DNA from: Hydrolagus colliei
Lineage: Eukaryota
Direction: 5' to 3'
DNA: 64,000 nucleotides
Assembly: GCA_035084275.1 (NCBI GenBank)
Contig: CM068769.1
Coordinates: 1,302,001 to 1,366,000, forward strand
Of the stretch, positions 17,723-53,028 are shown piece after piece (positions within the stretch are counted from its first letter, which is position 1; each line of letters opens with the position of its first letter). The notes beneath the pieces were generated by a model. The model was not told the origin of the DNA and did no database searches. It saw nothing but the letters and a program-made list of their open reading frames with translations. Position numbers and translations under genes: made by a program.

Positions 17723-20700
17723 TCATTTGTGCGTCAGTGAATGTATTAATTTTAACGGATATTTAGCTGCTTTTTTAAATTCTTCTCTGAATTTCTCCTG
17801 CGTTACAGCATAGATACACGTATTAGTGCAGCAACTAAGAAGTAGTAGCATGCATCCGGTTTCATACAAAACATAGACTGGATCATTATTGCCCGTGTAA
17901 GAAAAATACTTTGCAATTTGTCTATATATGTAATATACAACATAAGTCATCCACAAAATTATAAAACTCCCTGATATAGCAAACAGTATTACGATGGATT
18001 TCCTCCTGTTGATAATCTCAGGGTCATTGTTGATTTCAGTGTTGTTGGCGAGCAGATTCCTGCGGACTCTGTTTGCTGCTAAGATGTGTCTGATGGTCAG
18101 AGTGTTGAACAACAAAATCAGAATGAATGCAACACAAGGGGTTAGTAAGGTGTAAGACCAGGAAAAAACTTCCCAGGCAAGCGAATCATAGTAGCTTTCC
18201 TTTGTCTTACAGAACCAAGGTAATTTATTAATGATATACCAAGGCTCATAAGTAAAATACCAGGGAATGTTTCTGAAACAGCTCAGAGAGCAAACTATTC
18301 CTATCACCACAGCCGCTGATCTCTCCGTGCAATATGTTATTTTCATCCTCTGACAACAGATGGCAACATATCGATCAAATGTGAAGGCCATTGTGAGCCA
18401 CACAGAGCAGTCAGCCGCTCCGCAGAGCAGAATAGTGCCCAGTGAACACACTGGGGTGATGTCCAGCAAGCAAACTGGGAAATAAAGATAATTCAGTCGA
18501 GTCAATATCACTTCGCTGATAATAACGAGGAGATCGGCCGATGACATGGACACCAGGTAGAGAGTGATGCATCTGGAGAGACCGCAATTTCTCCGCGATA
18601 GGATCACAATCGCTATTATGTTAACTGTAGGGAAGGAAGGGAGAAACAATTCAGCAAGCGTCCACTATTCCTCAGAAGTATGAAGCTTACACGAATGTAT
18701 TAACAGTTCAAAAACAATCATTGTACTACAAATAATTGATTAATTAACGTCCAATGATTGCCTGAACCCGTTCGTTTTTCGAAGTACATCTTCATTGCTT
18801 ACACACCGAGTCGATGAAACTATTAACAACCAATATTTCCAAATTGATTCTCCCATCCAGAAATAAAATACCAATTTATATTCCTACGAACCAAATGCGT
18901 TATGCAGAAATTGATATGATTTTAATGTCTAGTCAGCGTTCGCTAAAGCCCATTTCCGGGCTACCAACTTACAGTTTTATGGCTCACTGCATCCCAGAGC
19001 TAAGTTAGTGCTGTACATTCTGTGGTCTGTTGAAATACTAAACTGAAGTTCTATCTAATTGCTGATTTAAAAATAAGATAATATTATTATTCAAAATGTA
19101 AGAGAATTCACCCTGTTCTCTTGGCCACGAGCTGAAATTGATCATTTACTCTCCAGCTACCGCATTCAGCTACAAAATACACAGTCGCTGGATATTGCAG
19201 TAAATACACAAAATGTCTTGGAGAACTCCTCCTGTTGTGTTCAACACATTATTTTCTAAATAAAAAACAAGGAGATCTGTAAAAGTGAAATAAAGTGTAG
19301 GAAGAAATAGCTGCATTGACACTGACGCAGCATAGTTCACAATGTCAGAGAGTATTTCGTCAAGGATATTCACCAGACCATTGTAATGTTATGTAATGTT
19401 CATTAGCGTTTCCAATGTAATAACGTAAGATTGGTTTTCAAGTATTTGAATTTACTTAATTCCATTTAAGACGGATTGTTGGATAGAATAATCTGATACA
19501 TTATCTTCTAAGCCTAACAATCTTCAAATTAATGCAATCATAAATCTCCATCAAATAAAGGAGAACACAAAAATGTGCACATACAACTAAATGTGATTTA
19601 GCTCTAGCGCTACATTGACAAGTCTCTAACAGTGTTGGGATTTCCGATCACGAGGTTCAAAGTATGACTCGACAATCCAAGATGGTGTATTAAAGGTGAT
19701 TATAAATAGAGTTGGTACAAGACGCGTTAAGTTTTACAACATAGATGTCCACCGAATGATACTACCAGTTGTTGCCGTCAGCCACAGGACACCAACTTCT
19801 CCTCAACTCTGGATATGTCGACCTTTATCGCTATCGCTCCGTTCTTCTTCTTCTACTTGTTCTTCGTCCAGCTTTTCTTACCCAACTGTGCACTATTGAA
19901 ACCCTTTTTCCAAGTGATCCTTTACAAGGTATGGCCTAGGAGAGGATTCTCATGTGTCCATCCTGCCCTCTTCTGGTACGGCAACGTATTCTGGTGTTTA
20001 TTCTCTTTGTCTAAATTAATTGAATAGATTTTATCAGACCTTGTTGTCTGTGTATTCTATCTTTCTGAAGTCATTAGTAATCCATCGACCAAAAACGGAT
20101 GTTCCCCTCTTATCAATACCTCATGTTGTTGCCATGAGTTTCTGCCTTAAACTATCTGCAGATTCATTGGGCTTTTTGAGAATAGCTTGCTTTTGTTTGA
20201 TAGAGTTTGTTGAATTGTCAGTGCAGCATAAACGAATCTACCACGTACCAACCCATATCTTGTTCCGTTACCTCTATGTAAATGTATGCTCTCCGGTGAT
20301 CATAGAGAAGTCCTCACTTCTCTATGAACCTGACCCTTTCTAAGGCTCCCGTTATTCCTTCCAACCCCAGAGAACCAGATTTGCTTTGTCCCATGACTGT
20401 CTGTAGTTTATGCATTTTATAATTATCCGTTAATTATTCGATTATATTTACGCTATCATTTATTTATTCTAGCAAAAGCAATAGAGGGTTGAAGAGGTAG
20501 AGCGATAAGGTAGAGCAGCACAAATTTGAGAGAGCTGGTAGAAACGTGATGTGCCAAAGAGACTCATTGTTGCGGTACATTTCTGTAATTCTATGAATGC
20601 CTCAGGTAAATATCAGCGAACAGAGTAAAGTACATTCTGCCAAGTTCTACAACGTTTCTATTATATAATGTTCGTTACTTGGTGTATTGTTGAATTTAGT

Positions 20701-21023
20701 TACGGTGTGGAATCCCGTTGTCTGTTGGTTCAACTAAGTACTTAAGATATGGAACAAACATTTAGTATTTCACCAAGCTATTCATAACCTGATCTCCTAA
20801 GAAAAATAAAGTATATCGCACTCCATATACGACTATTATAGAAACACCGATATAAGTTCAGTACGTTTTCCGACACGCAGAATAATTGAAATTCCAAATA
20901 TTGATTTTGTGAAGACATACCTGGAACACCAATAACAGCCAGAATTGGATAATAAATATACATTATCTGGAAGATTGTGTCCGGTTGATACACCTTCTCT
21001 GAATAAGTATGATATCTCTTCAT
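17723..21023 (-). CDS. GPR139-like 7TM receptor paralogue G2, intact, 334 aa
   Basis: Exon 1 21023-20921 (103 nt, MKRYHTYSEKVYQPDTIFQIMYIYYPILAVIGVP+G, donor GTATGT) and exon 2 18624-17723 (902 nt, acceptor ctacAG). Total 1005 nt with no internal stop. Seven hydrophobic segments, with ADLLV, PVC, FTFDRYVAICC, IPWYF, ECL2 Cys, LTP, LWMT and NTCIY. Confidence 0.93.
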
Positions 21024-21073
21024 CGTCCGTTTACAATAGGGTGGACTGACAATAAGGCATTAGAAAGTTTCTG

Positions 21074-21080
21074 ATTTATA
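21074..21080 (-). promoter_or_regulatory. TATA box upstream of G2
   Basis: TATAAAT about 50 nt upstream of the ATG. Similar elements precede G1 (546-552), G4 (48780-48786) and G5 (58405-58412). Confidence 0.4.
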
Positions 21081-22229
21081 CGAGATGGAATTACCACGTG
21101 CCACATTTCCCAGCACATATCCTGTAGCTGCCTCACCAACATAATCACCAGTTAATTGAACACAACTGTCCTTAGGGTGAATGTACAAACAAGTTTTCGC
21201 TGGATCCTAGATGAAGAAATTGAATAATAACGTCAAGTCAATCCTCTGTGGTGATCTTCGTTAGCTCGCTCCTCAGCCAGGCATAAATGCAGTTCTCCAG
21301 GCCAATGTTTAATTAATAGAATTATTCAAATGTACTCAATGCGATAGACACCAAACTGGTACGACATCAATGTCTCACTACTTTCATTTTCAATGCACCA
21401 AATTGACAATCTGAATAGTCGTTGAATTTTCCAAAGCTGTGTTTCATGCTCGTCGTGTCTCAAAGTTTAATAGTGGATACACTATCAAATTTTGTTAATT
21501 TTTTTGGCGAGTATTTTTCAATTTGCAACTTTAACTACAGTGTCAATTGCCCACATTTCATTTCTCGAAAAGTGACGTTTTGAATTCACATAACCAACGA
21601 GACCTAATAATATTACAACTTAAAAGTTCACGTTGTCTAAGCTCCCGTACTCCACCCATGCCACCTCGCTCTCCATGGATAACAGCAATAAAATTATATT
21701 TGTGTAACTACATTCCCAAAGGCTAGATGTCCCATAACAAACGTACCTTTGCTTTGAACTTTAAATTTTAGTGATTGTCAGTGAGTCGGCAGCTGTGAGG
21801 GTGCTCTGCCCTAATTATATCGGATTTCTTGCTGCACTATGTGTTTTGTTAATAAATATATCAATAAACAAAGATGATGTCTAGTTACATTTTCAAATGA
21901 TTGAAGATTCCTGCCATAGAGTTTCACAGCTTGACGTCAAGCTTGATATCGTTTGTACTTTTCCAAATCTTCTGTTTGATTGATAAACGTTCAATCGGTT
22001 ACCGCGCATGAATTCCAAGCCAGAAACCTGGCTTCAGTTCTATGCGAGGAGAAACCTTGGGACAGTTTCCTTACGCCACATAACTGACAAAAATCTACCA
22101 AATACAAATATATATTCAAAAATTGTTCATTTGGTAGTATATAGAATTTCAACGGCAAAGAATGAGCCATTGTCCCATCTATACTGTGCCTTCTCTTTGG
22201 AAAGAGCAACTCAATCCCATTGCCCAGCT

Positions 22230-23320
22230 CTCTCCCCGTAACCAAAAGACTTGTTCTCCCTAAATAAAGATCTTATTCTCTTTAAAAGCAGTTATCGAAT
22301 CAGTTTCCACTACCATTTCAGGCAATACATTAGTGATTCGAACAACCCGCTGAGTGAAAAAAAATACTACTCAGCTCCCCTCTGCTTAGTTTTGAAAATA
22401 TTTCAAATCTGGGACCAAGAGTCAAAGATTCGCCAAACAGTGGATACAGTTTTTCCATATTCACCCGGACGAATCTCCTCATGATTTTATGAACCTGTAT
22501 TGGGTCTCCTCTGAAATTTATTTGTTCCAAAGAGAAGAAAAACTATCTTATCTAGTATTTCCGCATAACTGAAGTCCCTCTATCCTTGTACCATTCCAGT
22601 AAAACGTCTTTGCACGATTTCCAATGCATTAATGTCCTTTCTATAGTGTGGTGAACAGAAATGAACAAAGTACTACAGTTGAGGCCTAACCAATGATTTA
22701 TAGAGGTTAGTCAGCACTTCCTGACTTTTCTACTCAACACCCCTATTTATAAAGCCTCGTATCCCATAAGGCAGCTTCACCGCTTTGTCTTCCTGACCTG
22801 TCGCCATCAACGGGTCATTAATACAAATCCCCAGATCTCTTGGTTCCCTCACACGCCTTAGAGTTGTATTATCCAGCAAATATTGCCTCCCCTCATTTCT
22901 TCTCCCAAAAAGCACCACCTCACAATTTTTTGCATTACAATTCATCTACCATATCTCTGCCCACTTTACCATGTTTTCTAAAGCTTCTTGCAGATTGTTA
23001 CTATCCTCTTCACAATTCACTATTCTCCCTAACTTAGTATCATGTATAAACTTGAAAGCTGTGCTCCATACACCCAAATCCAGATAATTACTAGAGATTT
23101 TTAAAAAACTAGCAGTGGTCCCAATACCGATCCCCGCGCCACGTCATTGCTCACTTTCCTTCAGTCTTAAAAAACAGCCGCTCATCACGAGTCTCTGCTT
23201 TCTATCTCGTAGCCAATTGTGTCCCTTTAACGCCGTGGGCCTCTGCGTTCTTTATAAGCCTCTCAAGCGGCAGTTTGTCAAATGCCCTATGAAAGTACAT
23301 GCAAACTACATGAACTGCGC
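22230..23320 (-). mobile_element. CR1 LINE ORF2 3' fragment(s)
   Basis: Translations RGDPIQVHKIMRRF, NAKNCEVVLFGRRN, EPRDLGI and KAVKLPYGIRGFINRG, typical of CR1 ORF2. Boundaries approximate. Confidence 0.8.
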
Positions 23321-23338
23321 TAACCCAGGTAACCCAAC

Positions 23339-26300
23339 CTCAGGAATTTTCTGGACCACCTACAGTAATTAATCTTTTTATTTGATAGTTTGGATGACTT
23401 TAGTGTAATGGTTGTTGTCTCTGACAATCGGAGTGATAAAGGTTCACAGCGGAATTTTACAGAACCTGAATTTCACTGTAAAATATCTAAATTATTGTAC
23501 AGTTCAATACCGCAGAAGCTCCTGCCAGGATGCTCAGTGCTGGTGCACAGCCACCCCACTGCACTACAGTTACTAGCAGAGGATCAGGTCAGTGTCTGAG
23601 CTGAAATACTGGGATTTGTGGGTGAAGAGAGAAGGGAATATTTCTACAAGTTCATTGAAGATGAGATGTTGGCTGCTGTTTATAGTCACGTGGAGGAGAA
23701 CGAGATCCTGTTCACCATGTGCTACAAACCGACCTACTGCTTTATCCTCGCTATGTCTCTGGGACCCTTCTTTAAAGGCAAATCCAGCCACAAACGGAAA
23801 GTTTCCAAGACAGTCACACAACTGTTCTCCTATTATATTTACCACATTCTAACACATCACAGTGCAGAGACACACAGCCCCCGCGATGTGTTGCTGAAGA
23901 CTGGTGAGTTGGTCTTCACTGGAGTCTCTCAGAGAAGCACTGTATTGAATAATGAAGATATGATCAAATCTAAACTCCAGCCGTCCCAGTTCCTCTTTGG
24001 CCTTCTCATGGAGCTTGTGGAGAGGGAGGGTTCAGAGCACATTGTGGTGTACACATTGCCGCACCTCACTCACCAGGAGTTTGTAGCCGCACTCGCTCTT
24101 CTCCTGTCTCCACATCGGAGACCTTTCAGGAAATGCCTGGTTTGTGCTGACAAGGAGGAGGACGGGCGGTTTCAGAGACGTCTGCGCTTTGTTGCTGGTC
24201 TCTCTTCGCCACAGGCAGCTCAGTCACTGGAGGAGTTTTTGGGGCCATTTGTTGATCAGACAACCTGCGTGTTGATCTATTGTCTAACGGAGAATATAGC
24301 AGAGCACATCCCACTACCTGTTTGAGTCTCAGAATCAAGCGCTGGCTCAGCTCACGCTGGGCTCTGTACAGTCACAGACATTCGGTGATTCCTCTCCAGA
24401 CAGAGCATTGACACTGACACCGATAGATTGTGTTGTGCTGTCTCAGGCCATTGGAGTGTGCGACACAAAGCAATTGGATCTGTGTCACTGCTATATTCAG
24501 GATGAGGGCCTCCAACGTCTGGTTCCTGTTCTGCACAAGTGTCAGGATTTGAGGTAATACCTCTGTTTGTATCTCTCACTGTGTCACACACAGAGGGTGA
24601 GGGAGAAACTGGGAAGCTCTCTCTGCTCTGGAGGAAGACAGAGGAAGCCTGTGGCCTAGTCACTTGGGCCGGAGGAGATAAGGCTGTTGAGTACGGGCAG
24701 TGAGGATTGTGGGGCCTGAGCTAATGGAACAGAGTGGGAGTGGCCGATAGGGGGCAGGAGAGAGGGGTCAAACCAGGGAGCTGCAACACTGGGAGTGTGC
24801 AAGGGAGCGAGTAGTGTTTGCCATCGTAACACATCCTCTCCCTCTTCTCGGTGTGCACTGACGTGCTCCTTTCCCTCAGCCCTTCCCTCTCCAACATCGA
24901 TGGTCGTACCTTCATCCTCTCTGCTCCGTGCCTGTGGAAATCCATCCCGGAGAAGCTCCTCCTCACCCTCTCCCTACCCCATTCAATGCCCATTTGAATA
25001 TCATCTTCTTCAATCACTCTTTCTTCCACCCCAATCCGCTGCCCATTCTCACGCTCTAACCCAAACCCCCAGCTCGGGTGCAAACTCCTGATAATCCAGC
25101 CTTTCTCCCTTGATGTGAAAGTTGCCGTGTAAATAAAACGTGTTGCTGTTGGCATAGAGACTGGAGTGACTTGGTCCTCCCAATCTATTCTCCATTCGCA
25201 CATCGCAACAAGTCTGGCTCCAAATAACTTTCAATCCCGAACACATAGTCCTCCCTCTCCTGCGTTATTCCCTCCATCTCCGAACTTCACCATTCACTGT
25301 CTGATATCCATCACTCAGTCCATCTCTCCTCCATTACCTGCATTTTCGACAGCGCTTTCGGCTGCCCCATTCCCTCTTTCCCCTCTCCCACTCTCCTTCC
25401 CCTTCTCTCTTCTTCTACCGTCCAACATCACCCAACCTCACCCCCCATCCCGCACGGGCCCCGACCAGAACGTTTAGCGTTTTGGCACGTTCTTCCGACG
25501 TGAAGTCCGCTTTAAAAGAGCAATTTTGTTGTTGTTTTTGCTGTTGCTTCCCTTCTTCAACGCCTATCTCTTTACCCCCCTCGACTAAATTCTTCCCTCA
25601 CTCTCCGACCTCCATCCCTCGCTCTCCGATATACTTCCCGCCCTCTCTGAGATCCTCGTCCCAACCCTACCTCCATCAATAACTGCCTCCCTCCATGCCT
25701 TTGTGACGTCCTCACTCCCTTCCTGCCTCCCTGCCAGGCCGACTGCCTCCCTCCTTCCGTTTATTTCTGCCTCTCAACATCCTCCTTCCCACACTGCCTC
25801 CCGCTCTTACTCAATGCATTGCTCCCTCCCTCTTTCCTTCCCCAAAAGCCTTCCTCCTTCCATGCCTTCGTGCCTGCGTCTCTGATTTCCTCACTGCGTT
25901 TTTGCACACCTGTTTGACTGGCAGCAGCTTCCGCTTGTCCCACGAACCCTCCACCCCACCACCGGAGGTAGCACTTTAAGCAAGTAATTTCCTCCAAATC
26001 TGTCTCTTTCTCCCCCTCAATCCCTCAATTTTGCCCCTTCTCTCCCATTGTCTGTCTATCTCTCTCAATCCCTCCAAGTTACTTCGCTTGCTCCCATTTA
26101 CTCCCATTTTACATTAACCCTTCCATCTCTCTCCCTGAATCACTCAACTTGCCCATACCCTCTCTCTCCCTGAATCCCTGCTGCTTGCCCGCTCCCACTC
26201 TCTCTCACGCAATCCCACGCATTCACCTCCGCCAACCCCCACTCTCTCCTATTCTCTCCTAAAAACCTTCATCTTGAACAGTGATAATGGATCCTAATTC

Positions 26301-26691
26301 CCCTGCCAACCCCCCAAATCGGAGTCCTGCTCTGCCACTAATACGCTCTCAGGCGCTGCTCTTTCTAGATTGTGCTACATAATTGCTAGTTGTTATTGTT
26401 GTCCCTGTGTGGAACAGCTGTGAGACTCGACCTGGTGTGATTATATTATCAATGTCAGTGTTTGTCTGAACCAACCAATACTTACTAAAGATGCATTTGT
26501 GTGTACGTTCAGGTGTCCGAATTTGGTTCCAGCTTCTGTAAATTAATGTCAATGTGTATTGTATGTTTACACTTTATTCGCTGTGTTTCTGTCGTTCTGT
26601 GCAGGCTGGACAGCAATCATCTGGGACATTCAGGAGTGAAGTGAATGTGTGAGGCTCTGAGGAACCTGGAGTGCAAAATACAGACACTGCA
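23339..26691 (+). pseudogene. NACHT-LRR (NLRC3-like, shark-type NLR) pseudogene
   Basis: Walker B-like FLFDSLDDF (about 23375-23401), KLLPGCSVLV, SV*AEILGF (TGA 23597-23599), ILFTMCYKPTYC, PHLTHQEFVAAL, RFVAGLSSP, frameshift near 24311, then HYLFESQNQALA...LTPIDCVVLS...GLQRLVPVLHKCQDL to the donor at 24554. An 87-nt LRR exon at 26605-26691 (LDSNHLGHSGVK*MCEALRNLECKIQTL) has a stop and a GT>AT donor. No Walker A or N-terminal domain was found. Confidence 0.9.
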
Positions 26692-27559: not shown

Positions 27560-27895
27560 TATAATGAATGTGCATTAACGCGAGGGCTGAAAGTCGCTCC
27601 TATACGGAGCAGAATGCTGGACACTTTGGCAAACCCAGGAGATTAGGTGACTCACGAGGTATATACCAGGCTTCTAAGAGACGCCCTGAACGTTTACTGG
27701 CGACAGCATTTGACAAATAGTGAGCTATATGGTACACTACCACACTGGTATCACAGACATTACTGCAGAGGCGTCTTAGGTTTAGCGGACATAGCTGGAG
27801 AAGCCGGGAGGAAACTGTCCATAGTGCTACTATCCTATGGGAACCATTGCACGGTCACAGAACACGAGGTAGACCGACCCTAACCTACCTCGTTA
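27560..27895 (+). mobile_element. RTE/RTE-X-type LINE ORF2 C-terminal fragment inside the TIR element
   Basis: Frame-shifted pieces LLYGAECWTL, VYTRLLRDALNVYWRQHLTNSELYG, RLRFSGHSWRS and WEPLHGHRTRGRPTLTY. Confidence 0.75.
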
Positions 27896-33350: not shown

Positions 33351-34559
33351 TACTGTTGTTGTTACACTGTACAGTATACTTCTTACAGTCGATAACGTGG
33401 ACGTATACAACAAAACACACTACACGTCACACTGTGAACTATTGTGACCCACTGAAAAGAAAAAAAATGGATATTGAAGGCAAATCGAGTAATTCCGTCT
33501 GAATTCCGTCGGTCCTGTATTATCAACAAATATATTTTTTATTTACAAAATATACAGAAAAAGGATACTTAACCACATTTTTCAACTCCTCTGTAAAGTT
33601 ACGCTGCGTCACGGCATAGATGGACGTGTTTGTACAGGAACTCAAAAGTTGCAGCATAAACCCGATTTGCTAGACCGAGAGAGCTATAGACGCGGCTTAA
33701 ATTGTTGTAGGTTGTAATCCGCCACTTCATTGAAGAGATAATTGTTGTCATCCATAAAAGTACAAAACTTTCCGATATTGTGAAAAGTAAAACAATGAAT
33801 TTTCCTCGCTGTTCTATTTCAGGATCTTTCCCTTTACCTCCATGTTTACTAATCTCGCTTCTCCTCCGGGCCATGCTGGCCTTTAAAATATGTCTGATGG
33901 TCAGAGTATTTTAGAGGAAAATTAAAATGAATACAATTAAAGGCGTAAAAACTCGTTGATACCAGTTATACACTCTCCAGATTGGCAATGAATGATAGCT
34001 GGGGTTGATAGTGCAGTAAAATGGCATATTGTTAATTGCCACTAGTGAACCAAAAATAAAATAACACTACAATACATTGCAATAAGCTTAGCACGCTGAC
34101 TAATATTATAACCAAATACGGAGTTTTCGCACAGTAATATGTAAATTTAGTCTTCTGACCACAAATAGCCACAAACCGATAGAAGGTGAAAACTACTGTA
34201 AACCAGGCAGAATATTTTGTGACCGCAGCCAGCAAAACAGCTTTTGCACGACACACGGGTGTGTAGAACAAAAAACTAATTGGGAAATAAATATTATTAA
34301 TGCGGTTCAATATTACATCGGTGATAATGACCTTCAGGTCTGCCGCTGCCATGGCTACCAGGTAAACAGTGATGCCTTTGGAGAGACCACAATTTCCACG
34401 GGAAAGAATCAGTGTCGCCATCAGGTTAACTAAAGGAATATAAGAAAAGAGACATGAAAGATATAATCCTAACATTTTTGTACAGTTCATAATGGACAAC
34501 GTTAATTACAATACTTTTTGTGGGTAAATGGGACAGTCAGTTAGCAGACAGCAAATCCC

Positions 34560-35400: not shown

Positions 35401-37920
35401 GTATTAGTGCTCTGAAACAATTTAAGAATCTTATTATGGATGCCGGGCGTGGGATATCGTTGACCTGTACCCCTGGAGAAACTACCTTGTATTTTCGCAA
35501 AATGTAGCTGGATTTATAAAACTCCATCTGAAGAGAGGAAACGTGGATCTCGGGTTTACATTTCATCGAAATGAATAAACATTCAATAATAAAACACCAT
35601 TCCGATACTGCATTGCATTGTGAGCCTGGTGTGTATTCGTACTGTGTCCTAGCCAGAAATTGGTTGACATGTAACTATGAGGCAGGAATACTTTCAAATC
35701 TACCTGGCTTATACTCAGAATGACAGAAACGTTCAATATCAATTAATATCCTACCATTTCAATGTTAAAAACATATCGCGTTTTATTTCGTGGTATAATT
35801 GAACGTAGAATAAAGCTTGGGATTTGCCTCAGGTCTGAACATATCCCAGCGTCTCAAACTGTTTCATCAGCTTTCGCTGCAAAGTAAAACGAAGGTAGGT
35901 GAGCAATGGTAATAATAAAAATGAAATGGTAAATGTGATTCTAGGCATCAACTCCCTTCCGTTTTCCAGTGTCCACTTGAAAATGCAGATGGGAACATTT
36001 TTTTCCATGTGTCAAAATAATGTTTGCCTCTCTAACACTGCAGCTCTTAAAAACATTATGATATTAACTTTGATTCTTGCGTCAATATCCCAGCTATCAT
36101 CTTGAACTGACAATTATCTGAGTTAAAATTCAGAGTTGGTTTTCAGGCAGATGGTTAACATGGAGCGGAAATACAACAAATAGTTCCACATAAACGCAAC
36201 ACAAAAGGAGATTGATAAATATCTAAATTACAATGCCACGTCTCTCCACCGATCTTTGTACCTGATTTACCAACCATTGAATTTTGCAAGGGTTTGGCAG
36301 TGGGTAGAAGATTGTGAAGGATTGCTGATGTCACGATCAGCGTTGTGTGGTATTACTGGACATTGGGCAACTAAAACAGTATTTGTAAATCAATAATACT
36401 TTCTCGCCAGCTTTGTAGCTACTTTTCCAGCTAAGACCATAATAATCGTAAAGCGTTTGGCATTCAGTTATATCAATCACAAGTAAGAACAAAATGTGAG
36501 ATTTAAAGCGCGTCTTTGATGTCAGGTGAATGACTCGAAACGCGGAACATCCAGGGACAGAGATCCAAGTATAGGCGAGCAAAGGGTTAGGGGGGAGAGA
36601 CGTGGGAAGTCGGCTGAAGGCACAATCGAAAGGGGGGGGCTTGAATACGGCCTAGAAGGAGTAAAGGATGGACGTGAGGCGAAGGAACTGTGGAAGACAT
36701 TTCCGCAGTATAGGGTCTGAGAAGAAAAACCCGTCCACCGATGGTCTGGCCGGTCGAGGGGAGAATATGGATCAGGCAGACGGCCCGCTGAACGGAGCGA
36801 AACGGGAAGTTTGTTTGTGAGTCAGCAGGTTGGAGAGATTCAATGGGGCAAGGTGGTGGGTGGCCTTGAAAATTAGGACGATAATCTTGAATTCGAATAA
36901 TTTTAAAAGGAGTTGAGATGGAACAATCATTTTACCAATGGCATTATTTTTCCAATTGATGAGCCATGTCGGCTTGCTGATGACTAACTATGTACGGGAG
37001 TATGATATCCCTGATGATCGAGACTGTGGAACATGGTTCAGGAATTTGATTACCAAAACCGCCAGTACATGAACCTGGTTCTAAATCTATTTCACACGCT
37101 TTACTCATTGGAAAGAGCTCAGTTAATGGAGATCTCGATCACACTGTGGACACCCGCCGCAACGAATGGTTAAATGCTGCGAACAGAGATTCTTCCCTCT
37201 CAGCGCATGTTATCGCTGTAAGACACAGAATCTCGAGATTCACAACATATTAAAAATATACAACGGATCGGCGAATGTTATATTGATGCAAATATTATAA
37301 TAGCTCACCAGCAACTCCAATTATTGCAAGCATGGGGTAGTAAATTGCTTCAACATTACAAATGGTTAAATATGCCATGAATTGAAGCAGTTAGTTGCTT
37401 CTGCGTTTATTATTTAGGGAAGGCTTCTACGAATATACTGATATAACAATTTGATGAGAAGTTGTTTTATTAAAACAGCTAACCTCCAGGGAGGAATTAA
37501 TTGGTTTCATCATTGATGTCATTTTACAGTCAGTGAACAAAAATTTTCTACTGGAAATCAGCTCTACGATATCTGATAACTAACATGAGAAAAAACTGAA
37601 TTTTTTGTCTGATTTGTAAGCTTTCGTTTACGAGCAACCACGTGTAGTTTTCTTTTGATAACTGAAATCCATTATTTTTTGGTCCATTGTTTTTTATTCG
37701 TGAAAATTTGTGTTCGATTTTAAGACTGGAATACATTACTTAAACATTCTGTGAAGTTCGACAGTGGACAACGAGTCGATGCAGGTTTCTGCATAGAAGT
37801 ATTCAGTTATATGAAGGAAATACGTTTGTTGGGGTACGAGATTGGCGTTCCAATAACAGACGGAATTCTGTATAGCATTAAAGGAGTTATTCAAATACAT
37901 CGAGCAGCAGTACCTCGAAT

Positions 37921-38412
37921 CAATCAACCAATCAAACAAGCAACCAAACAACCAGTCAACCAANNNNNNNNNNNNNNNNNNNNNNNNNNNNNNNNNNNNN
38001 NNNNNNNNNNNNNNNNNNNNNNNNNNNNNNNNNNNNNNNNNNNNNNNNNNNNNNNNNNNNNNNNNNNNNNNNNNNNNNNNNNNNNNNNNNNNNCGTCCGT
38101 CCGTCCGTCGACTCGTCCATCCGTCCATCCGTTCAAGCTTGCATCCGTCAGTCCGTCCGTACTTCCGTCCGTCCGTCCGTCCGTCCATGCTTCCGTCCGT
38201 CCGTCCATGCTTCCGTCCATGCTTCCGTCCGTCCGTCCATGCTTCCGTCCATGCTTCCGTCCATGCTTCCGTCCGTCCATCCGTCCGTCCGTCCGTCAGT
38301 CCCTCCCTCCCTCCCTCCCTCCCACCCTCCCTCCCTCCGTCCCTCCGTCCCTCCGTCCGTCCCTCCGTCCCTCCGTCCATCCGTCCATCCATCCATCCAT
38401 CCATCCATCCGT
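37921..38412. repeat. Compound tetranucleotide microsatellite (CAAC/TCCG/TCCA/TCCC) around an assembly gap
   Basis: Direct inspection. N gap at about 37964-38093. Confidence 0.9.
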
Positions 38413-42605: not shown

Positions 42606-43439
42606 AAGTGGTAACCAAGAGTTTCTCGACATGTAACCACCCTTAATGCATGAGAGAAAGATGATGATTAACACAAAGAGACAAAGTGGGAATGAGGCTG
42701 ATGTATGTATCTATTACCAGGTACTCCGATAACTGCGAGAATTGGATAGTAAATAGCTTCAACTTCTACACTTCTTGGATTCCCCATGTTTGAGTGAGTA
42801 AAGTGTGTCTATCTCTGTGAATCACACGGTCGCCGACAATCAGAAGGTACATTTTAGTGCGTTACTATTTATAGAGAAGATACTTGGCTCTGGGGACACC
42901 TAGGTAAAGGATATCATTGTCGATTTCATTAACCATGCTTGTTTGAACACCACGTCTAAAATAGTATCAAATAATAAGCTAAGAATAAACTAAGTTTGAA
43001 GTAGCACCTTCTCACGTCAACATTACTTGCTTCATTCGCACACTGTACTGTGAAATTAATCGTCTGTATATTTCGTGAGCGAATCGCGACAGCATTTCTA
43101 TCACAGGTGTCCCACTAATAGCCGTTGATTGATTGACTTATTTATGATTACTATTTATCTGATAACATTTCCTTCCTTATGCAGTCCGACAATAGACTAA
43201 CATACGCTTTGCTACTTACTGCGAGATAAACAAATGCGCGAAGTGGAAAGAAACTTGAGGGAGAATCAAACCCAGTTTTCTGGCTTGTCAGAAGACTGCT
43301 CCAACTTTTGAGCTGTGGCACTCAATACATTATTATGATATGCATACAATACATACACAACTTCTAGCACTAGGCGGTGACTTGAAGATGGAGCACAAAA
43401 GGAGAAGGGGCATGGATAAATAGAGATTTTTCAGAGTTT

Positions 43440-44030
43440 CGTTATTCATTCGCTGTACGTGCGGCCACCATTTGCGGAAAACATAGATCGAGACACTGCA
43501 AAAGGCCATAGGTAGCCAAATCGACAGAAATATAAAGAAAAATATCAGTGCATAGAGGTAATTGTAAATTTCTCCTCAGCTCCCCTCTGCTTCGTTGTAA
43601 AACTATATTAAATCTGTGACCACGATTCACAGATTCGTCCACCAGTGGAAACAGTTTTTTCCTTATTCATCATGTCGAATCCACTCATGATTTTATGAAC
43701 CTATATCACGTGTCCTTTCAACCTTCTCTGTTCCAAAGTGAATAAACCTAGCCTTTCTATTCTTCCCCATAACCGTAGTCCCTGAATCCTGGTGTCATTC
43801 TAGTAAGCCTGCGTTGTACCCTTTCCAATGCTTTAACTTCCGTCCTATATTGTGGTGACCAGAATTGAACACAGTACTCCAGCTGTGGACTAAACAAAGT
43901 TTTACAATGTTTAGTCAGCACTTCCTGACTTTTGTACTCTATAACCCTATCTATAAACCCCAGTATCCCATATGCCTTCTTAACGGCTTTGTCTACCTGT
44001 CCTCCCACCTTCAAAGAGTCCACGAAATAA
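43440..44030 (-). mobile_element. CR1 LINE ORF2 3' fragment
   Basis: QVDKAVKKAYGILGFIDR...PQLEYCVQFWSPQY...LERVQRRLTRM and NRGHRF...SRGELRRN. Confidence 0.88.
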
Positions 44031-46929
44031 ATAAGACAAATGTCAGAGCACACATGTATTCGGAAACGAGTGTGAGGAAATGATGAATGCCTCGTTGAGT
44101 TGGTAATCGTAAAAATAGAGGATATGGAGGAAAACACAGAAATGTGTGCAAAATAGTGGAGCCTCATCCCATCCTTTAATAATGAAGAGCTGATCCGTAT
44201 CTCAACTGCAATTAGCCAACCTCTCTAGTATCCCTCCATGAACTTACGTAACGCTCACCTAACATAAACACCGGGAATCTCCGGTAACGCCCAGCAGTCC
44301 AGGTAGCATCTGTAATGCAAAGCAACCGTGTGAGCATTTTGTATCCATCACATTGTGTCAGAATTGTGGCATGTTGGGAGTGAGATGCTTTTCAGGAATC
44401 AAACTGGTGATGGGATTCAGGACACCGAAGGCAACGGGGATAGTTGGATAGAGAACGGAGGATGCTGTTTAGAGAGACGATTGTGCTGTGAAACAAAACT
44501 GCAGATGATGGGGTGGAGGTTCGGTGGGTTGCAACATAAAAATGAGAGAAGAACTGCTGAAAATGCAAAATAAAGATGTGGGAGGAATTGCAACAGAATA
44601 GGCAGATCAGAGAGAGAAAATCTGTTTGCCCGAAAAGATTGATGTCGTAATGAGCAAAGAAGAGTGAGTGAGGATAGTGAGCTATTCTGGTCTGAAATTG
44701 TACAGATCAATATTTGAGACGCGAGGGCTGTACATCTGTGCATTCGAGTGTTGAAGAAGTTATTAGCCTTTGCAACCACAGCATTTTTGGGCAGAAGGTT
44801 CCAAACCTCCAACTACTTTGGGTGAATAGCTAGCTAGCAACCTGATTCAAATGTGTCCAAGCTATAATTTTCAGATAGGTTTCCAAAATCTCAACCAACT
44901 GACCACTCAGCACTTTAATCTCAATGGAGTAGAGGCGTGTTTCAAAATGTATCCCTGTTCGATACTAATTATTAGGATCCTAACTATTCTGGTGTGGATT
45001 TGGTATCCCCACAGCAGAGCCAATGTATCCTTCCTGAGGAACGATAGTCATAAATGACCTATAATAGTTCGGGTGTATCGAACGCTCAACTTTAAAATTT
45101 AAACATACTTTTCTTTGGTTTACATTCCGTTTTGCTTGAGTTGAAGGGCACATGCCATTTATTATTTTTATACCTTTCTCTAATTCTGAACATGTTTCTT
45201 ACATTTGCGTACGTGGATACCCAAATTCATTTCATCTTAGACAGCTCATGGTTTCTCACCAAGTTGAAAATATTTTGTATTGCTATTTTGGGACACGTAG
45301 TGGATATGACCTGATCTCCACCTTGAATTACTTTCCCCCTAGTTTCGCCCACTCCATTAATCTATCTAATACACTTTGTATCTGTGCACTCTCCTCTACA
45401 TGATAAACCGTGTCACCAGGGAAAACTTGTCAGTTGCAATTGTACCTCCGATTCCCAGCTCTTTTGCTCCTGCTAAAAAATAGTTGAGTGGAAAGGCGTC
45501 CAATTGCTTTCTGTAGCCCATGTTGACGGCAACCACAGACGTTCTCTGATTCACCATGATTGTGGGATCGTTCTATGTTGAATGTTCCAATTTCAATAGT
45601 CATGCATTACCCACACATTTTACAAATCCGTGTTTACTCTCTTTGATTACGTTCCTATTTGTCCAGATGGTTGTGACATGGTAGAGATTTAGTAACTGAA
45701 GATACGATAACAGATCTATTCTGTCGGTAAAGATTCAGTAAAGATTTTCGGTGTACGACCATTCGTCAGAGCTAAAAATATGGATTTATCTCTGTCGAAG
45801 GATCGTGATCCAGTAAGATAGGTTCAAATTGATTAAATGTTGATATTGAAGAATATTTTGAAAATGACAACCAATCAATCAATCAAAACTTTCATTTATG
45901 TAGCTCCTATTCAAATCGACAGGACGTTCCAAGGCGCTGTATAGTTAGACAAGAGCAGTGGTTTGGGTCGTGTTGTCGAGGCAGAATGAAGAATAGGAAA
46001 ATATTTGACTATAATTGTGGGCTAATTACGGCAGGCAAACTGCGCAAAGCAGTGTCCCACGAACAGTTATGGAAGTGGGGCCAGTGGAAAAGGTTGGGCA
46101 AAGATGGCAAGAGAAGGAATCGGAGCAGGGGGAAGGAGAACAGGAAAGGCGACTGGACATTTGTGGGCGAAATGATCTTTTGTTACTGATTCCAAGATAT
46201 TTGGAATATTAGCAGTAAATGCATCACAATTGCCATCAACGGTGTCAGAACTCATGACCATGACCAGCGGGATACTAGATGTCGTGTGTTGGGATAATAG
46301 TGAGTGAAGAGAAGGAAGCATTGAAAGGCAACCAAAGGAACAAATTAACTGTACTGTGTTGAGAAGTTATGTGAAGGCGGCAAGAATGAAAATGAGACGA
46401 ATGGAATAAAGATCCAAAGTTTGAGGTCTAAAAGCCTGACGGTCTCATTGGCGATCTGGGAGGTTGACGTTGATCAGGCCATATAAAACTGATTGAACAG
46501 CGTCGAAAGATTGCTGAACGGCGATCAGGCTTTGTCACGCATGGTTTCTCATTTGTTAAGCCACGTTGATTCTGTCTTCTCATGGCTTGGTCTTCTAGAT
46601 ACCACTTATGTCAGGAAGGCACAAGGATTGAATGGATTTGAAGGCGAGGATGGGATTTATCTCTGTCCTATGTTGGATGGCATTGCCAAGGACGTGGAAT
46701 GATGTGGACACAGAATCTTACCCGAACAAAAAGAAACGTATCAACGTCTGTATTGAATATTGTCAAGCACTGAGCATGTAAAGCCTTCTCTGAGAATCCC
46801 ATAAATTCACTGCCGTAAGAGGGAAACAGCGTTTGATCAACTCTGTGCGAGAAGGCCGACGCCTAATCCTAGTAATATAAACCCATGGTGATAGTTTCTC
46901 CAAGCAGTGCAAACAGCACTTAAATGCCA

Positions 46930-48170: not shown

Positions 48171-48873
48171 CACAATAATAGTTCTGCCAATCCATTGCCC
48201 ATTTTAAATGTTACATGCATGCAGCGTAGTATTTTCGGACACGCTCTCAAGTCTGCCTGTGCCTTCCTCTGTCTGTCCCCTCTCTCTAACTGTCCCCTCT
48301 CTCAATATCTCCCCCACCCTTCAAGTCGTCGCCTCCTTCCCNNNNNNNNNNNNNNNNNNNNNNNNNNNNNNNNNNNNNNNNNNNNNNNNNNNNNNNNNNN
48401 NNNNNNNNNNNNNNNNNNNNNNNNNNNNNNNNNNNNNNNNNNNNNNNNNNNNNNNNNNNNNNNNNNNNNNNNNNNNNTCTTCCCTCCCTCCCTCCATGCA
48501 TCCCTCCCTGCCTCCCTCCCTGACTTGCCTGGATTCGAACATTGGTCTCACGCTTGTAATGCGAGCGCTCAAACCACTGAGCTACAGGGGCTTCACAAGC
48601 GTGGGATACGACGGGAATGGATGTCAGCATTAATGGTACACTGGGCTGCACCCCCCCAACACCAAATTAAATCCTCGAGGTAAATGGCATAGCACAGGTT
48701 TAGTAACTGTTTTGCACACGGATCAAATTAATCGACGACCCCGTGGTACCATTGCTCAACAAAGCGCTCCTTGTTGATTTATATAAGAACCCGTTTGAGA
48801 CTTTCCAGCATCGTCTTTCAGCCGTCAGCTGCTGCCTCTGCCGAGAGAAGACGTAATACTTTCCTATTTGAAG

Positions 48874-51800
48874 ATGCCATCTCCGATTATTCACAGAATA
48901 GAAGACATTTACCACCCGATTCTCGCTGCGTTTGGTGTTCCCGGTAAGTGTTTTACCAAAGTTAATCTATTTACTAATATGCATTAAGGCTCGACCCAGT
49001 TTACCACTGTCCCTCTGAATCAGGCAATCATGGCTTTTAACCCTTTTTAACTTCAAATTAACCTCGTTTATTCCCCATCTTCCTCTCTTACTTTAACACA
49101 CCCCATCTTACCCTCCCTCTGCCCCGTTGACAACCCTCTCCCCTTATACACTATTGTCCCCATTTCTGCCCTGTCCCAATTTCCGTGACCGTTTGTGGAA
49201 CACTTCTGTGCACAATTTGTCTGCCGCGGTTCGCCCACAAAACGTCGGCTTTCCTGCTCTCCTTCCCCCTACCCTGACTCCCCCCTCCACACACACTCTT
49301 CTTCATCCTGCCACGGCGGCGCCCCACTCCACTTGTCCCCTCCTGACTATACAGCTTGAACGAAGCTATGTATATTTAAGTTTTGATTGATTGTTTGATT
49401 GATAAATTAACAACGAAATAATTTGTTGAAGCAACAGAAGGAAGTTCATTTCCTGGCAGTGTGATAGCATCCTTACAAGCTCCCTTACGTCATACACCAG
49501 TTAATAATACCCCAATAAATAAAAAAAAATAACACATTGATCACTACAATGGATAAAATATTTATGCGCCATTGGCTGGTGTATTTCGTGCACAAATATA
49601 CAGTCACTTCACGTCAGTGTAGATTCGGTCAAGCGCTTAACACGTCTACAAGTTACGAAGTGTACTGTTTAAAAATATCACGATTCTTATTAAGTATGTT
49701 TGTGCTCTCTCTGTCTAATTGTGTCTCTCCGGCTCCCTCTGGCGGTGTATGTTTCTGAAACTATCTGAATGCCTTTTTTTATGTGCCCTACTCACTCACG
49801 TGTCTTACTTTTTCTCCCTGTGTGGTGTAGTTTATATCTGTTTGAGTTTCCATAGCTGTTGCGCGCTCTCTCTGTTTCTCTTTCTCGCCGTGTGCCTGGA
49901 TCTGATTCTGTATTTGACTCTCTCTGTGTTAGCTACCAATTGCGAAAGGAGCTACTTACATATAAGATGTTGTTTTTACTCATGTTGTTTATGTATATCT
50001 CCATCCCTTTCTCTCAATTTCTCTGCTTATCTGTTGCTATCCCGTTATCCCATATCTCAAACTGTGTGTAGCTCTCTGACTGTCTGAGAGCGCGTCTCTG
50101 CCTATCTTTCTCTCTCGCTCTGTATGTCCCCAATTCTCCGTCAGCGTGTACATATTTCTACATATCTAATGTTCTATCTTTATCCCTACACATCTAAAGA
50201 AAATGTTCATTGCTTTCCCTTTGTGTATGTGACTCTCTCTGTTGCTATGTATTTCTCTCTGTGTCTGTGTGTATCATTCTCTTGTCGTGTGGTTAACTCG
50301 CACACACTTTGCTCGTGCAGCACTGCATGTCTGCTTGTATCATGCACTTTCTTCCTCAGCTGTCTGTAGCTCCCTCTCTCTGACTGTGTGCGGCTCTCTC
50401 TCACTCTATCCATTTATTTGCGCGAAACTTTCTCTCCTTAAGTAAGCGTTGTGTGTGTGTCGTTCCCGAATTGCTTCTGTCTCTCTCAGTATCGCAAGCT
50501 GTCCCTCTGTGTATCTGTCACTGTCTCTGCAATGCTTTGTATTCCCCATCTCCTGTATATCCCCTACGACCGTAGCTCAGTGGTTAGAGCACTCGATTTA
50601 CCATCACGCGATCTGTGTTCAATTCCTGGCAGGCTAGGGTGAAATCTTGGGCAGGTTTCCTTTCTCTACCCGCCTATTAATAATGCCAGATAAAAATTTG
50701 TTGATTTCAATCCATCACTCCTTATGTGTCACTGATTTGCTCCTTTGCGCTCACCAATAGACAGTCAATTCACTTATACACACTCTATTCTCTGACGCAC
50801 TTAGAGACTTGTAGAAGACGTAAAATGCGCGACATCAAAGCACGCTTTATTATTATTATCTCTGTGTGATTGCACCTTTCTATCTCTTTATCTGTATATC
50901 TATGTAATTGTGCCTCATTGTGTCCATTTCTCTCCGTGTCTATCTCTCTCCTTCTCTCTCCGTGGTTAGCACTCCCTCTGTTATTCTCCAGGTAGTTCTA
51001 TAAATTCACTGTTGATTGGCTCGCGCCTGCGCCTTGATGCATCCGGCGCTGACATTATCAACCTCCATCGTCGCTCACTCGACCTCATCAAGCCACTCAG
51101 GTACCTTGGTGTCTTGTTCGACACTCATGTGTCTTGCCTTTATCACATCCAAGCAATGCCACGGTCTTCCTTTCCTCATCTAATCCACATTGCCCGTCTC
51201 CGCCGCTACTGCATCACCTCAAAGCCGCTGAAAGCCTCACTGATGCCTTCATTACATCCCGGGTCGACAATGTAAATACTCTGCTGGTCAGCCATCCCAA
51301 TTGCTCGCTCCCCAGGCTGCTGATGCTCCAGATACCTGCGGTATGTGTCCCCTACTGACCCAAACTCCGTATTCCATTCTCCCTGACCGTGTTTATTGCA
51401 CATTGTACGTCAGCTTCTTTTTCCTGTCTCTTCATCTCTTGATCTGTGTCTATCTCTCTCGTTCCAATTGTGACTGTGAGTAACTATTTCTCTAGTATAT
51501 GTGTCCCTCTCTTTCCGTTGATAACAATCTATTTCTCCATGTATCTGGTGAGCTGTCTTTTTGCTATCCGTATTCCACTCTCTCTCTCGTTGCGTATCTC
51601 TTACTACAGTAGTGTACTGAGAAGCCGGAGGACCGAGTTTCATTAAGAACTAGTGGGAAAAATAAGGCAAGTTGCTTTACTCCACACATCTCTGTTTACA
51701 TAGATTTAGTTTGGTTAGCTGTGGGGTTTGAGTTCTTGAGGAATCGATCGCCATCCATAAGAAAATGCAAGTAAAGCACATTGCACACAGACAGTGAGAG

Positions 51801-53028
51801 GGGGATTTGCTACCGGCTACCGCCTAGAGAAAGAGAGAGAGAGGGAGAACTAAGCATGGCCAAACAGATCCACAGACATAGTTAGAGATAGATTTTCTCT
51901 GCATTATTTTCCAACCATCTTTCTCTGGGATTTACGTGTATAATTTTGATGCATGGTAGTCTCAGTCTCTCTCTGTCTCTCTATGTGTGTGTGACTGTGA
52001 CACATGGCGCAGGGCAGCGAGCCAGAATTATTATAACTGGTCATTTCCTCTCTCTCTCTCCCTCTCTCCCTCTCTCCGTCTCTCCCTCTCTCCCTCTCTC
52101 CCTCTCTGTAGCTAACCTGACGGCCATTGTGATCCTGTCCCGAGGGAGGTGCGGTCTATCCAAATGTGTCTCTCACTATCTGGTGGCCATGTCAGTGGCT
52201 GATATGATGGTGGTAATTTTTGTGGTGATTTTCTATCGCATTGTTCCTTACTACTTCCCATATTCATTCATGTCCATCACCCATGTTTGCGCGGTGCTGG
52301 AGGCACTGCGTGGTGCAGCATCGGCAACCTCTGTCTGGCTAACTGTGGCTTTCACCTTAGACCGTTATGTCGCCATCTGCTGCCAACAACTGAAATCTAA
52401 ATATTGTACCGAAAAAACAGCTGCTGCAGGGATAGCGGGGCTGAGTCTGTTCTTCATTGGGGAAAACATTCCCTGGTATTTTGCCACTGAACCAGAGTTC
52501 ATAATTAACAATATACCGCGGGGATGTGAAAATAAAGCAAGCTTTTACTGGTTACTCCCATGGACAGTTTTTGACCTCCTCGACCTTATTTTAACCCCTT
52601 TTCTCCCATTCGTCGTGATTCTGCTGCTCAACTCCCTGACTGTCAGGCACATCCTGGTTGCCAGTCGGGCCCGAAGGAGATTGAGGGCACACAGTGATGG
52701 GGATAGGAATAGAGTTCAGAGAGACAGTGATCCAGAGATAAAGAGCCGAAGGAAAGCCATTGTTTTACTTTTTGCGATATCAGGCAATTTTATAGTGTTA
52801 TGGATGACATATGTTTTATTTTTCTTACACCGTAGGATTTCAGAGAGTAACTACTTCTCAGGCTACAATAACACTTGGTATATTATTGGTCAAACTGGCT
52901 CAATGCTGCAGCTTTTAAGCTCCTGTACAAACACGTGCATTTACGCTATTACACAGACTCAATTCAGAGAGGAGATTAAGAGAGCGGTGGCATTTCCTTT
53001 TATATTAATTGTAGAAGTATTTCATTAG
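48874..53028 (+). CDS. GPR139-like 7TM receptor paralogue G4, intact, 328 aa
   Basis: Exon 1 48874-48943 (70 nt, MPSPIIHRIEDIYHPILAAFGVP+G, donor GTAAGT) and exon 2 52112-53028 (917 nt, after a polypyrimidine tract and tgtAG). Total 987 nt open, with SRGRCGLSKC, VADMMV, FTLDRYVAICC, IPWYF, LTP, LWMT and NTCIY. AATAAA at 53030-53035. Confidence 0.93.
49732..49745 (-). promoter_or_regulatory. CTCF-like motif
   Basis: Minus strand CCGCCAGAGGGAGC in the G4 intron. Confidence 0.45.

What the first reader, a model, noticed from the sequence alone, without database searches (positions are those of the whole stretch)
17723..53028. Receptor family lacks both the TM6 (CWxP) and TM7 (NPxxY) prolines
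Seen: TM6 reads FIILWMTY (G2), FIVLWMTY (G4) and FVLLWMTT (G3). TM7 reads SCCTNTCIY, SSCTNTCIY, SSCTNTSIY and SCSTNTCI (G1). DRY/DRF, the TM3-ECL2 Cys pair and the TM5 proline are kept. The N-terminus is only about 10-20 residues, and ICL1 carries a conserved SRGxCGLSxC motif. Established: P6.50 and P7.50 are among the most conserved class-A residues and form the activation kinks. Inference: shared loss in intact, divergent paralogues points to a non-canonical activation mode, altered basal activity or atypical coupling.
Basis: partly seen in the sequence, partly recalled or inferred. Interest (0 to 1): 0.7.

Follow-up and report, generated by a model that had tools for sequence, protein, structure and literature searches.

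The report
Proline-less GPR139-like receptor gene cluster
This chimaera-type genome stretch holds members of a very large cartilaginous-fish receptor family that really does lack two helix-kinking prolines found in most such receptors; one of the two losses is already known from its human relative GPR139, the other appears undescribed.

Summary
G2 and G4 read LWMTY in TM6 and TNTCIY in TM7. Alignments to GPR139, PrRP receptor and TRH receptor put Thr exactly where P6.50 and P7.50 belong, and neither helix has a shifted proline.

These genes have two coding exons, with a phase-1 intron inside TM1. With exon 1 added, G2 (334 aa) and G4 (328 aa) are intact. G1 and G3 are dead copies. The two N gaps lie in microsatellites outside all coding sequence.

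The family has at least 1,496 database proteins. All 120 listed best hits are sharks, rays and chimaeras, auto-named "probable GPR139". Six sevengill-shark paralogues give dN/dS 0.20-0.56 (TM6 0.33, TM7 0.25).

The P7.50 loss is not new. GPR139 has F7.50, and restoring Pro there almost abolishes coupling (PMC8807744). The P6.50 loss is the unusual part: that proline is 99% conserved in non-olfactory class A receptors. Basal shark members and a salamander relative keep it, and a coelacanth/teleost sister clade also lacks both prolines.

Altered activation is a reasonable inference and was not tested. The scan has met this family in at least five other windows of this genome, never for this trait.

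The parts
20921..21023 (-). G2 coding exon 1: ATG, 16-residue N-terminus and first half of TM1; ends ...GVP + 1 nt
   Evidence: tblastn of Callorhinchus N-termini, E 4e-13. Donor G|GTATGT read. Spliced model in frame.
18625..20920 (-). G2 intron (phase 1, about 2.3 kb), GT...polypyrimidine tract...CAG
Evidence: Sequence read.
17723..18624 (-). G2 coding exon 2, from N1.50 to the stop. T6.50 codon ACT at 17945-17947; T7.50 codon ACG at 17819-17821. Full product 334 aa, intact.
   Evidence: Pfam 7tm_1 62.3 bits. Keeps 97 of 107 family-conserved positions.
48874..48943 (+). G4 coding exon 1: ATG, about 9-residue N-terminus and first half of TM1
   Evidence: tblastn. Donor G|GTAAGT. Model in frame.
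48944..52111 (+). G4 intron (phase 1, about 3.2 kb) ending in a CT-rich tract + TAG
52112..53028 (+). G4 coding exon 2. T6.50 codon ACA at 52807-52809; T7.50 codon ACG at 52933-52935. Full product 328 aa, ORF intact.
   Evidence: Pfam 7tm_1 75.9 bits. Keeps only 89 of 107 conserved positions, close to the pseudogenes.
630..699 (+). G1 exon 1 (ATG...GIP + 1 nt, donor GTAAGT)
1899..3324 (+). G1 exon 2 remnant, a pseudogene. Acceptor AG lost; stops in ICL1, ICL2, at W6.48 and at Y7.53; about 0.5 kb interspersed-repeat insertion at roughly 2460-2960; one frameshift before TM7.
37309..37378 (-). G3 exon 1 (donor GTGAGC)
33553..34430 (-). G3 exon 2 remnant, a pseudogene. Pieces lie in three frames (at least two frameshifts); a stop in TM5; D3.49 changed to Y.
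42718..42787 (-). Orphan family-type exon 1 with a GT donor. No exon 2 was found between it and G3's exon 1.
   Evidence: Its exon 2 may be lost or hidden in the gap at 37964-38093; this is not resolvable here.
58447..58549 (+). Exon 1 of a further copy (86% identical to a Callorhinchus N-terminus), donor GTAAAT. No intact exon 2 in the window.
   Evidence: Only a 21-residue C-terminal fragment at 59112-59174 follows it.

Best explanation
The window holds a birth-and-death cluster of a large cartilaginous-fish family of class A receptors related to GPR139. It contains two intact two-exon genes (G2, G4), two pseudogenes (G1, G3) and two orphan first exons.

The family keeps most of the signalling machinery:
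- N1.50 and D2.50
- DRF/DRY
- the TM3-ECL2 disulfide
- F6.44 and W6.48
- N7.49 and Y7.53
- helix 8 with F-R

It has Thr in place of both P6.50 and P7.50, and usually Cys in place of W4.50.

The two proline losses are separate events. P7.50 was already absent in the wider GPR139 group. P6.50 was lost later, near the base of the big cartilaginous-fish expansion, by what can be a single CCN-to-ACN change.

Most likely these are ordinary ligand-gated, G-protein-coupled receptors. They would rearrange TM7 without a proline, as GPR139 is shown to do. TM6 would get its flexibility from something other than a proline, perhaps Thr6.50 or the family-specific Gly at 6.42.

Shown here: identity, gene structure, motif register, family-wide conservation and purifying selection. 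Inferred: signalling competence and the hinge mechanism.
For: Identity. At least 1,496 homologues; all 120 listed best hits are chondrichthyan and mostly named 'probable GPR139'. There are 109 clusters at 50% identity with E <= 1e-30. The nearest solved structure is GPR139, by sequence and by fold: AF2 model pLDDT 85.6, pTM 0.83, top Foldseek hit 7vug.

Gene structure. GT-AG models close in frame. Six Heptranchias genes have the same split, exon 1 = residues 1-23, with introns of 1.6-13.5 kb.

Register and conservation. N7.49 and Y7.53 are invariant, T7.50 is 91/92, W6.48 is 91/92 and T6.50 is 67/92. Thr codons vary synonymously between copies: ACT, ACA and ACG at 6.50.

Selection. Pairwise dN/dS is 0.20-0.56, with TM6 0.33 and TM7 0.25. 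For G2 against G4, pN is 0.29 and pS 0.71.

History.
- F7.50 outgroups keep P6.50.
- Basal shark members (WLPK, WMPN) and a salamander relative keep P6.50 with T or M at 7.50.
- The crown expansion lacks P6.50.

Precedent. [quoted passage not shown] Odorant receptors replace CWxP by FYGx (PMC12573245).
Against:
- G4 keeps only 83% of the conserved positions, no better than the pseudogenes at 79-80%. It may be under relaxed constraint despite its open frame.
- The selection estimate rests on six paralogues of one shark species, and the pooled pairs are not independent.
- The tree is a quick search. The branches that place the P6.50-bearing members basally have 86-93% SH-aLRT support and are not starred.
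- DSSP on the model shows unbroken TM6 and TM7 helices. No coordinates were available, so kink angles could not be measured.
Confidence: 0.65

Rival explanations
1. The family is a chemosensory (olfactory, taste or solitary-cell) receptor repertoire. The missing P6.50 would then parallel odorant receptors, whose TM6 also lacks CWxP.
For: - Very large lineage-specific expansion with tandem clusters and frequent pseudogenes: two of four full copies here.
- Moderately relaxed dN/dS of 0.2-0.56, highest in TM5.
- Odorant receptors also lack a conserved P6.50.
- A true shark has few OR, TAAR and V1R genes (PMC6368271, listed).
Against: No expression data. Copies lie in antigen-receptor regions (a TCR V-type Ig V-set segment in this window; IgH relics in other windows), which suggests no tissue. 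No paper in the library links these genes to a sensory epithelium.
Confidence: 0.2
2. Without both proline hinges the receptors are atypical: constitutively active, arrestin-biased or non-signalling scavengers, rather than ligand-gated G-protein couplers.
For: P6.50 is 99% and P7.50 is 88-94% conserved in class A receptors (PMC6504862; PMC8807744). W4.50 is also replaced, by C in 64 of 92. The third DRY residue is F in 71 of 92.
Against: D3.49 and R3.50 are invariant, and F6.44, W6.48, N7.49, Y7.53 and helix 8 are conserved. This pattern is expected of G-protein couplers. GPR139 couples to Gq and Gi without P7.50.
Confidence: 0.12
3. The window copies are decaying and the motif change is neutral drift in pseudogenes.
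For: G1 and G3 are clearly dead. G4 has lost 18 of 107 conserved residues, some by non-conservative changes such as W to R in ECL2 and P to H at the start of TM3.
Against: G2 and G4 have intact frames and canonical splice sites. The same motifs are fixed in hundreds of intact genes across lineages as distant as sharks, rays and chimaeras, under dN/dS below 1.
Confidence: 0.03

Closest known systems
GPR139 (human orphan class A receptor; structures 7VUG and 9M42)
   Same: Nearest solved relative by sequence and fold. Both lack P7.50 while keeping N7.49 and Y7.53. Both have a short N-terminus, and both keep DRY and W6.48.
   Different: Only about 22-24% identical. GPR139 has F7.50, P6.50 and R6.51, the last needed for ligand recognition. 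The family has T7.50, mostly T6.50 and Y6.51, plus a Cys-containing ICL1 motif (SRGxCGLSxC) that GPR139 lacks. GPR139-type sequences (F7.50) sit outside the family, across a branch with 99% support. These genes are therefore not GPR139 orthologues, whatever the automatic name says.
Coelacanth/teleost 'probable GPR139' clade (P0236 Latimeria, P0244 Odontesthes); possibly the GPR210 group of PMC6504862, a link not checked here
   Same: Sister-level relatives at 31-34% identity. They share an ICL1 motif of the same type (RRNCMLSKS). They also lack both prolines: TM6 reads S-A-T and TM7 reads NMYLY.
   Different: They also lack W6.48 and have M, not T, at 7.50. Only a few representative clusters turned up in the search.
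Vertebrate odorant receptors
   Same: A very large class A family arranged in tandem arrays, with many pseudogenes and no conserved P6.50; CWxP is replaced by FYGx.
   Different: Odorant receptors keep NPxIY in TM7 and lack W6.48. They are only distantly related to this family, and their sensory expression is established whereas here it is unknown.

Membership tests
Class A (rhodopsin-like) GPCR, Pfam 7tm_1 | 7tm_1 profile match above the gathering score | tested here: met
   G2 exon 2 scores 62.3 bits and G4 75.9 bits against a cut-off of 30.5.
Class A (rhodopsin-like) GPCR, Pfam 7tm_1 | Seven helices plus helix 8; N1.50, D2.50, D/ERY; TM3-ECL2 Cys pair | tested here: met
   AF2 model of family member P0004 shows seven TM helices and H8 at pLDDT 85.6. 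N25, D54, D107, R108, C83 and C162 are invariant or nearly so.
Class A (rhodopsin-like) GPCR, Pfam 7tm_1 | CWxP with P6.50 (a hallmark, 99% conserved) | tested here: not met
   W6.48 is kept in 91 of 92. Position 6.50 is T 67, M 10, P 5 and other residues 10.
Class A (rhodopsin-like) GPCR, Pfam 7tm_1 | NPxxY with P7.50 (a hallmark, 88-94% conserved) | tested here: not met
   N7.49 and Y7.53 are invariant. Position 7.50 is T in 91 of 92.
GPR139 orthologue | Groups with GPR139-type sequences in a tree | tested here: not met
   The F7.50 sequences form the outgroup, across a branch with 99% support. Identity to GPR139 is 22-24%.
GPR139 orthologue | F7.50 (NFFLY), P6.50 and a basic residue at 6.51 | tested here: not met
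   The family has T7.50, mostly T6.50, and Y at 6.51 in 76 of 92. The GPR139 features are taken and the alignment.
Cartilaginous-fish 'probable GPR139' expansion (no published name found) | High similarity to members; ICL1 SRGxCGLSxC; LWx(T) in TM6; TNTxIY in TM7 | tested here: met
   G2 is 73% identical to a Callorhinchus protein and 54-62% to the other listed hits from sharks, rays and chimaeras.
Cartilaginous-fish 'probable GPR139' expansion (no published name found) | Two coding exons with a phase-1 intron in TM1 just before N1.50 | tested here: met
   Found in G1-G4 of the window and in six Heptranchias genes.
Chemosensory receptor repertoire (functional class) | Expression in sensory neurons or cells | not testable with these tools

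The most novel reading that the evidence does not exclude
The cartilaginous-fish GPR139-like expansion could be an undescribed sensory or surveillance receptor repertoire. Judging by database counts it may run to many tens of genes per genome. Its members would work without either the TM6 or the TM7 proline hinge, which would make it a natural, family-scale example of class A activation with neither conserved proline hinge.
Probability: 0.2. Interest if true: 0.75.

Novelty: new variant of a known kind. Interest (0 to 1): 0.5.

Why it matters
P6.50 and P7.50 are textbook hinges of class A receptor activation. A vertebrate family with more than a thousand database members lacks both prolines but keeps W6.48, N7.49, Y7.53 and DRY under purifying selection. 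That makes it a natural test of how far those prolines are needed.

The family also contains its own controls. Basal members still carry P6.50, and rare members have regained Pro at 7.50. Reciprocal swaps between such natural sequences would therefore be informative.

Separately, the family is large, specific to one lineage and known only by an automatic name that misleadingly suggests GPR139 orthology. I found no paper describing it in the library searched.

Tried and rejected
- I first read G2 as truncated, because of an in-frame stop 12 codons before 'TVNIIAIV' and no ATG. I also read G4's N-terminus as a microsatellite replacement. Both readings were dropped once tblastn with Callorhinchus proteins found separate first exons and GT-AG junctions.
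- A shifted-register proline was looked for and not found.
- The protein-atlas search gave only generic peptide-receptor neighbours.
- Seven literature searches found no description of the cartilaginous-fish expansion.
- The model's DSSP string cannot show kink angles and no coordinates are returned, so TM6 geometry was left untested.
- dN/dS for G2 against its nearest relative P0001 could not be computed, because that protein has no contig on record.
- G2 against G4 is saturated at synonymous sites (pS 0.71), so the ratio of 0.17 is only indicative.
- Ballesteros-Weinstein numbering in TM5 is ambiguous. Either P186 or P189 (P0004 numbering) could be P5.50, so I make no claim about position 5.58.
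Full report
**What is in the window**

Composition, an Ig V-set (TCR V-type) segment, an NLR fragment and earlier notes of this scan mark this as a chimaera-type cartilaginous-fish genome, close to a T-cell receptor locus.

**Assembly gaps, tested first**

The gaps at 37964-38093 and 48342-48477 both lie inside short tandem repeats: CGTC-type and AATCAAAC-type arrays for the first, a TCCC-type array for the second. The first is about 590 bp upstream of G3's start codon. The second is about 400 bp upstream of G4's start codon. No exon or intron of any model crosses a gap, so no frame depends on them. Nothing was filled in.

**Gene models**

The mechanical ORFs are misleading. G2's ORF has an in-frame stop 12 codons before the end of TM1 and no ATG. 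G4's ORF begins with a Ser/Leu/Pro-rich stretch.

Callorhinchus proteins match a separate 5' exon 2.3 kb upstream of G2. Short-query tblastn finds equivalent exons for every copy. Reading the DNA shows canonical junctions:
- Exon 1 ends ...G(V/I)P plus one nucleotide, followed by GTAAGT, GTATGT or GTGAGC.
- Exon 2 follows a polypyrimidine tract and CAG or TAG. It begins with two nucleotides that complete the codon just before N1.50.

Spliced, G2 (21023-20921 joined to 18624-17723, minus strand) gives 334 aa. G4 (48874-48943 joined to 52112-53028, plus strand) gives 328 aa. Both are open from ATG to stop.

Six Heptranchias perlo genes have the same split, between residues 23 and 24, with introns of 1.6-13.5 kb. 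The structure therefore dates back at least to the common ancestor of chimaeras and sharks.

G1 is dead:
- its acceptor AG is lost;
- it has stops in ICL1, ICL2, at W6.48 and at Y7.53;
- it carries a 0.5 kb repeat insertion and a frameshift.

G3 is dead as well. Its pieces lie in three frames, it has a stop in TM5, and D3.49 is changed to Y.

**The observation**

The register is secure.
- phmmer of G2 against GPR139 aligns LWMTY with LWAPR and TNTCIY with INFFLY.
- A profile of 92 family sequences aligns 'llwltyv' with 'vcwlplh' of the PrRP receptor and 'llwmpyr' of the TRH receptor.
- The same profile aligns 'ctntfiY' with 'cynpfiY' and 'ainpviY'.

Thr therefore sits at 6.50 and at 7.50. Across the 92 sequences the only TM6 prolines are five at 6.50 itself, and TM7 has three isolated prolines, each in a single sequence.

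**The family**

G2's exon 2 finds 1,496 proteins at E < 1e-5. The best 120 are all chondrichthyan, most of them auto-named 'probable G-protein coupled receptor 139'. The closest is a Callorhinchus protein at 73% identity. An exhaustive search of 50%-identity representatives gives 109 clusters at E <= 1e-30, followed by a sharp drop to sequences about 30% identical.

Conservation in the 92-sequence alignment:
- N7.49 and Y7.53 are invariant.
- T7.50 is 91/92 and W6.48 is 91/92.
- F6.44, D2.50, D3.49 and R3.50 are invariant.
- Position 6.50 is T 67, M 10, P 5, V 3, L 3, A 3, I 1.
- The position aligned to W4.50 is C in 64 of 92.
- The ICL1 core C-G-L-S is invariant.

An AlphaFold2 model of member P0004 has pLDDT 85.6 and pTM 0.83, with seven helices and helix 8. 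Its best Foldseek match in the PDB is GPR139, 7vug.

**Selection**

Exon 2 of six recent Heptranchias paralogues gives pairwise dN/dS of 0.20-0.56. Pooled by region, every region with synonymous differences is below 1. TM6 is 0.33 and TM7 is 0.25. TM5 is highest at 0.52. These are six genes of one species and the pairs are not independent.

G2 against G4 gives pN 0.29 and pS 0.71. Synonymous sites are saturated there, but the contrast is clear. Thr6.50 is encoded by ACT, ACA or ACG in different copies.

Measured against 107 positions that are at least 90% conserved in the database sequences:

| Copy | Positions kept |
|---|---|
| G2 | 97 of 107 |
| G4 | 89 of 107 |
| G1 (pseudogene) | 84 of 105 |
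| G3 (pseudogene) | 80 of 101 |

G2 looks constrained. G4's open frame is the only sign that it still functions.

**History of the two losses**

In a quick maximum-likelihood tree, with names:
- The outgroup is formed by GPR139-type sequences, including one from a nemertean. They have NF(F/Y/V)LY in TM7 and keep P6.50.
- Next comes a coelacanth/teleost clade with S-A-T in TM6 and NMYLY in TM7. It too lacks both prolines.
- Then comes a grade of shark sequences (WLPK and WMPN, with NT.IY) and a salamander sequence (WLPK, NMCIY). These keep P6.50.
- Last is the large crown expansion, which lacks P6.50.

Support for this order is 86-93% SH-aLRT, so it is tentative. Rare crown members have Pro again at 6.50 or 7.50, for example a whale-shark sequence with NPCIY.

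The reading I favour is that P7.50 was lost early in the GPR139 group and P6.50 was lost later, more than once.

**What is already known**

- P6.50 is given as 99% and P7.50 as 88% conserved among non-olfactory rhodopsin-like receptors (PMC6504862).
- The GPR139 structure paper gives 94% for P7.50. [quoted passage not shown] It also shows that a basic residue at 6.51 is needed for ligand recognition (PMC8807744).
- The family has Y at 6.51 in 76 of 92, so GPR139's aromatic amino-acid pharmacology need not carry over.
- Odorant receptors replace CWxP with FYGx but keep NPxIY (PMC12573245).
- From my own knowledge, not checked here: Ser and Thr can bend helices through side-chain to backbone hydrogen bonds (Ballesteros and colleagues, 2000).
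- I found no paper describing the cartilaginous-fish expansion.

**How it most likely works**

The conserved microswitches argue for signalling-competent receptors. By homology with GPR139, TM7 can rearrange around Y7.53 without a proline.

For TM6, position 6.50 tolerates T, M, V, L, A and P, which suggests it is no longer the hinge. A family-specific Gly at 6.42 (87 of 92) is a candidate for the needed flexibility. This step is inference only.

What the family senses is unknown.

**Verdict**

Half of the trait (P7.50) is a known property of the GPR139 group. The other half (P6.50) is a real, family-wide and apparently undescribed variant. The scan has reported this family from at least five other windows of the same genome under other headings.

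Noticed in passing
window 7731-8072 (-) and 10469-10720 (-): Two Ig V-set type segments. The first has a Pfam V-set hit and a TCR V-like ending in ...YYCAL. Together with earlier notes of NAR-TCR cassettes nearby, this places the receptor cluster inside or beside a T-cell receptor V region.
   Followed up: partly
window 23618-24325 (+): An isolated NLR fragment with NOD2 winged-helix and NLRC4 HD2 domains but no NACHT or LRR. It is probably a gene relic.
   Followed up: partly
window 2393-2758 (+), 22730-22945 (-), 43757-44167 (-): Three copies of an interspersed repeat whose ORF tail reads ...LERVQRR(F/L)TRM.PG.RD..Y..., which looks LINE-like. One copy interrupts G1 in TM5/ICL3.
   Followed up: no
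window 42718-42787 (-) and 58447-58549 (+); fragment at 59112-59174 (+): Two family-type first exons with good donors but no matching second exon in the window, plus a 21-residue C-terminal fragment 560 bp after the second one. They could be remnants of deleted copies, or the missing parts could lie in assembly gaps.
   Followed up: partly
family alignment A1, P0004 residues 186 and 189: TM5 carries two conserved prolines three residues apart (TPC.PF, in 90 and 85 of 92 sequences). An invariant Asn lies eight residues after the second. TM5 numbering against GPR139 is therefore ambiguous, and Y5.58 may be missing as well.
   Followed up: partly
family alignment A1, ICL1 (P0004 residues 33-42): The ICL1 motif SRGxCGLSxC has two near-invariant cysteines on the cytoplasmic side. 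A related form, RRNCMLSKS, occurs in the coelacanth relative and nothing like it in GPR139. Its function is unknown.
   Followed up: no
window 56.9-57.9 kb and 61.6-63.9 kb: Long N runs flanked by Ser/Leu/Thr/His-coding microsatellites. The 3' end of the window is poorly assembled.
   Followed up: no
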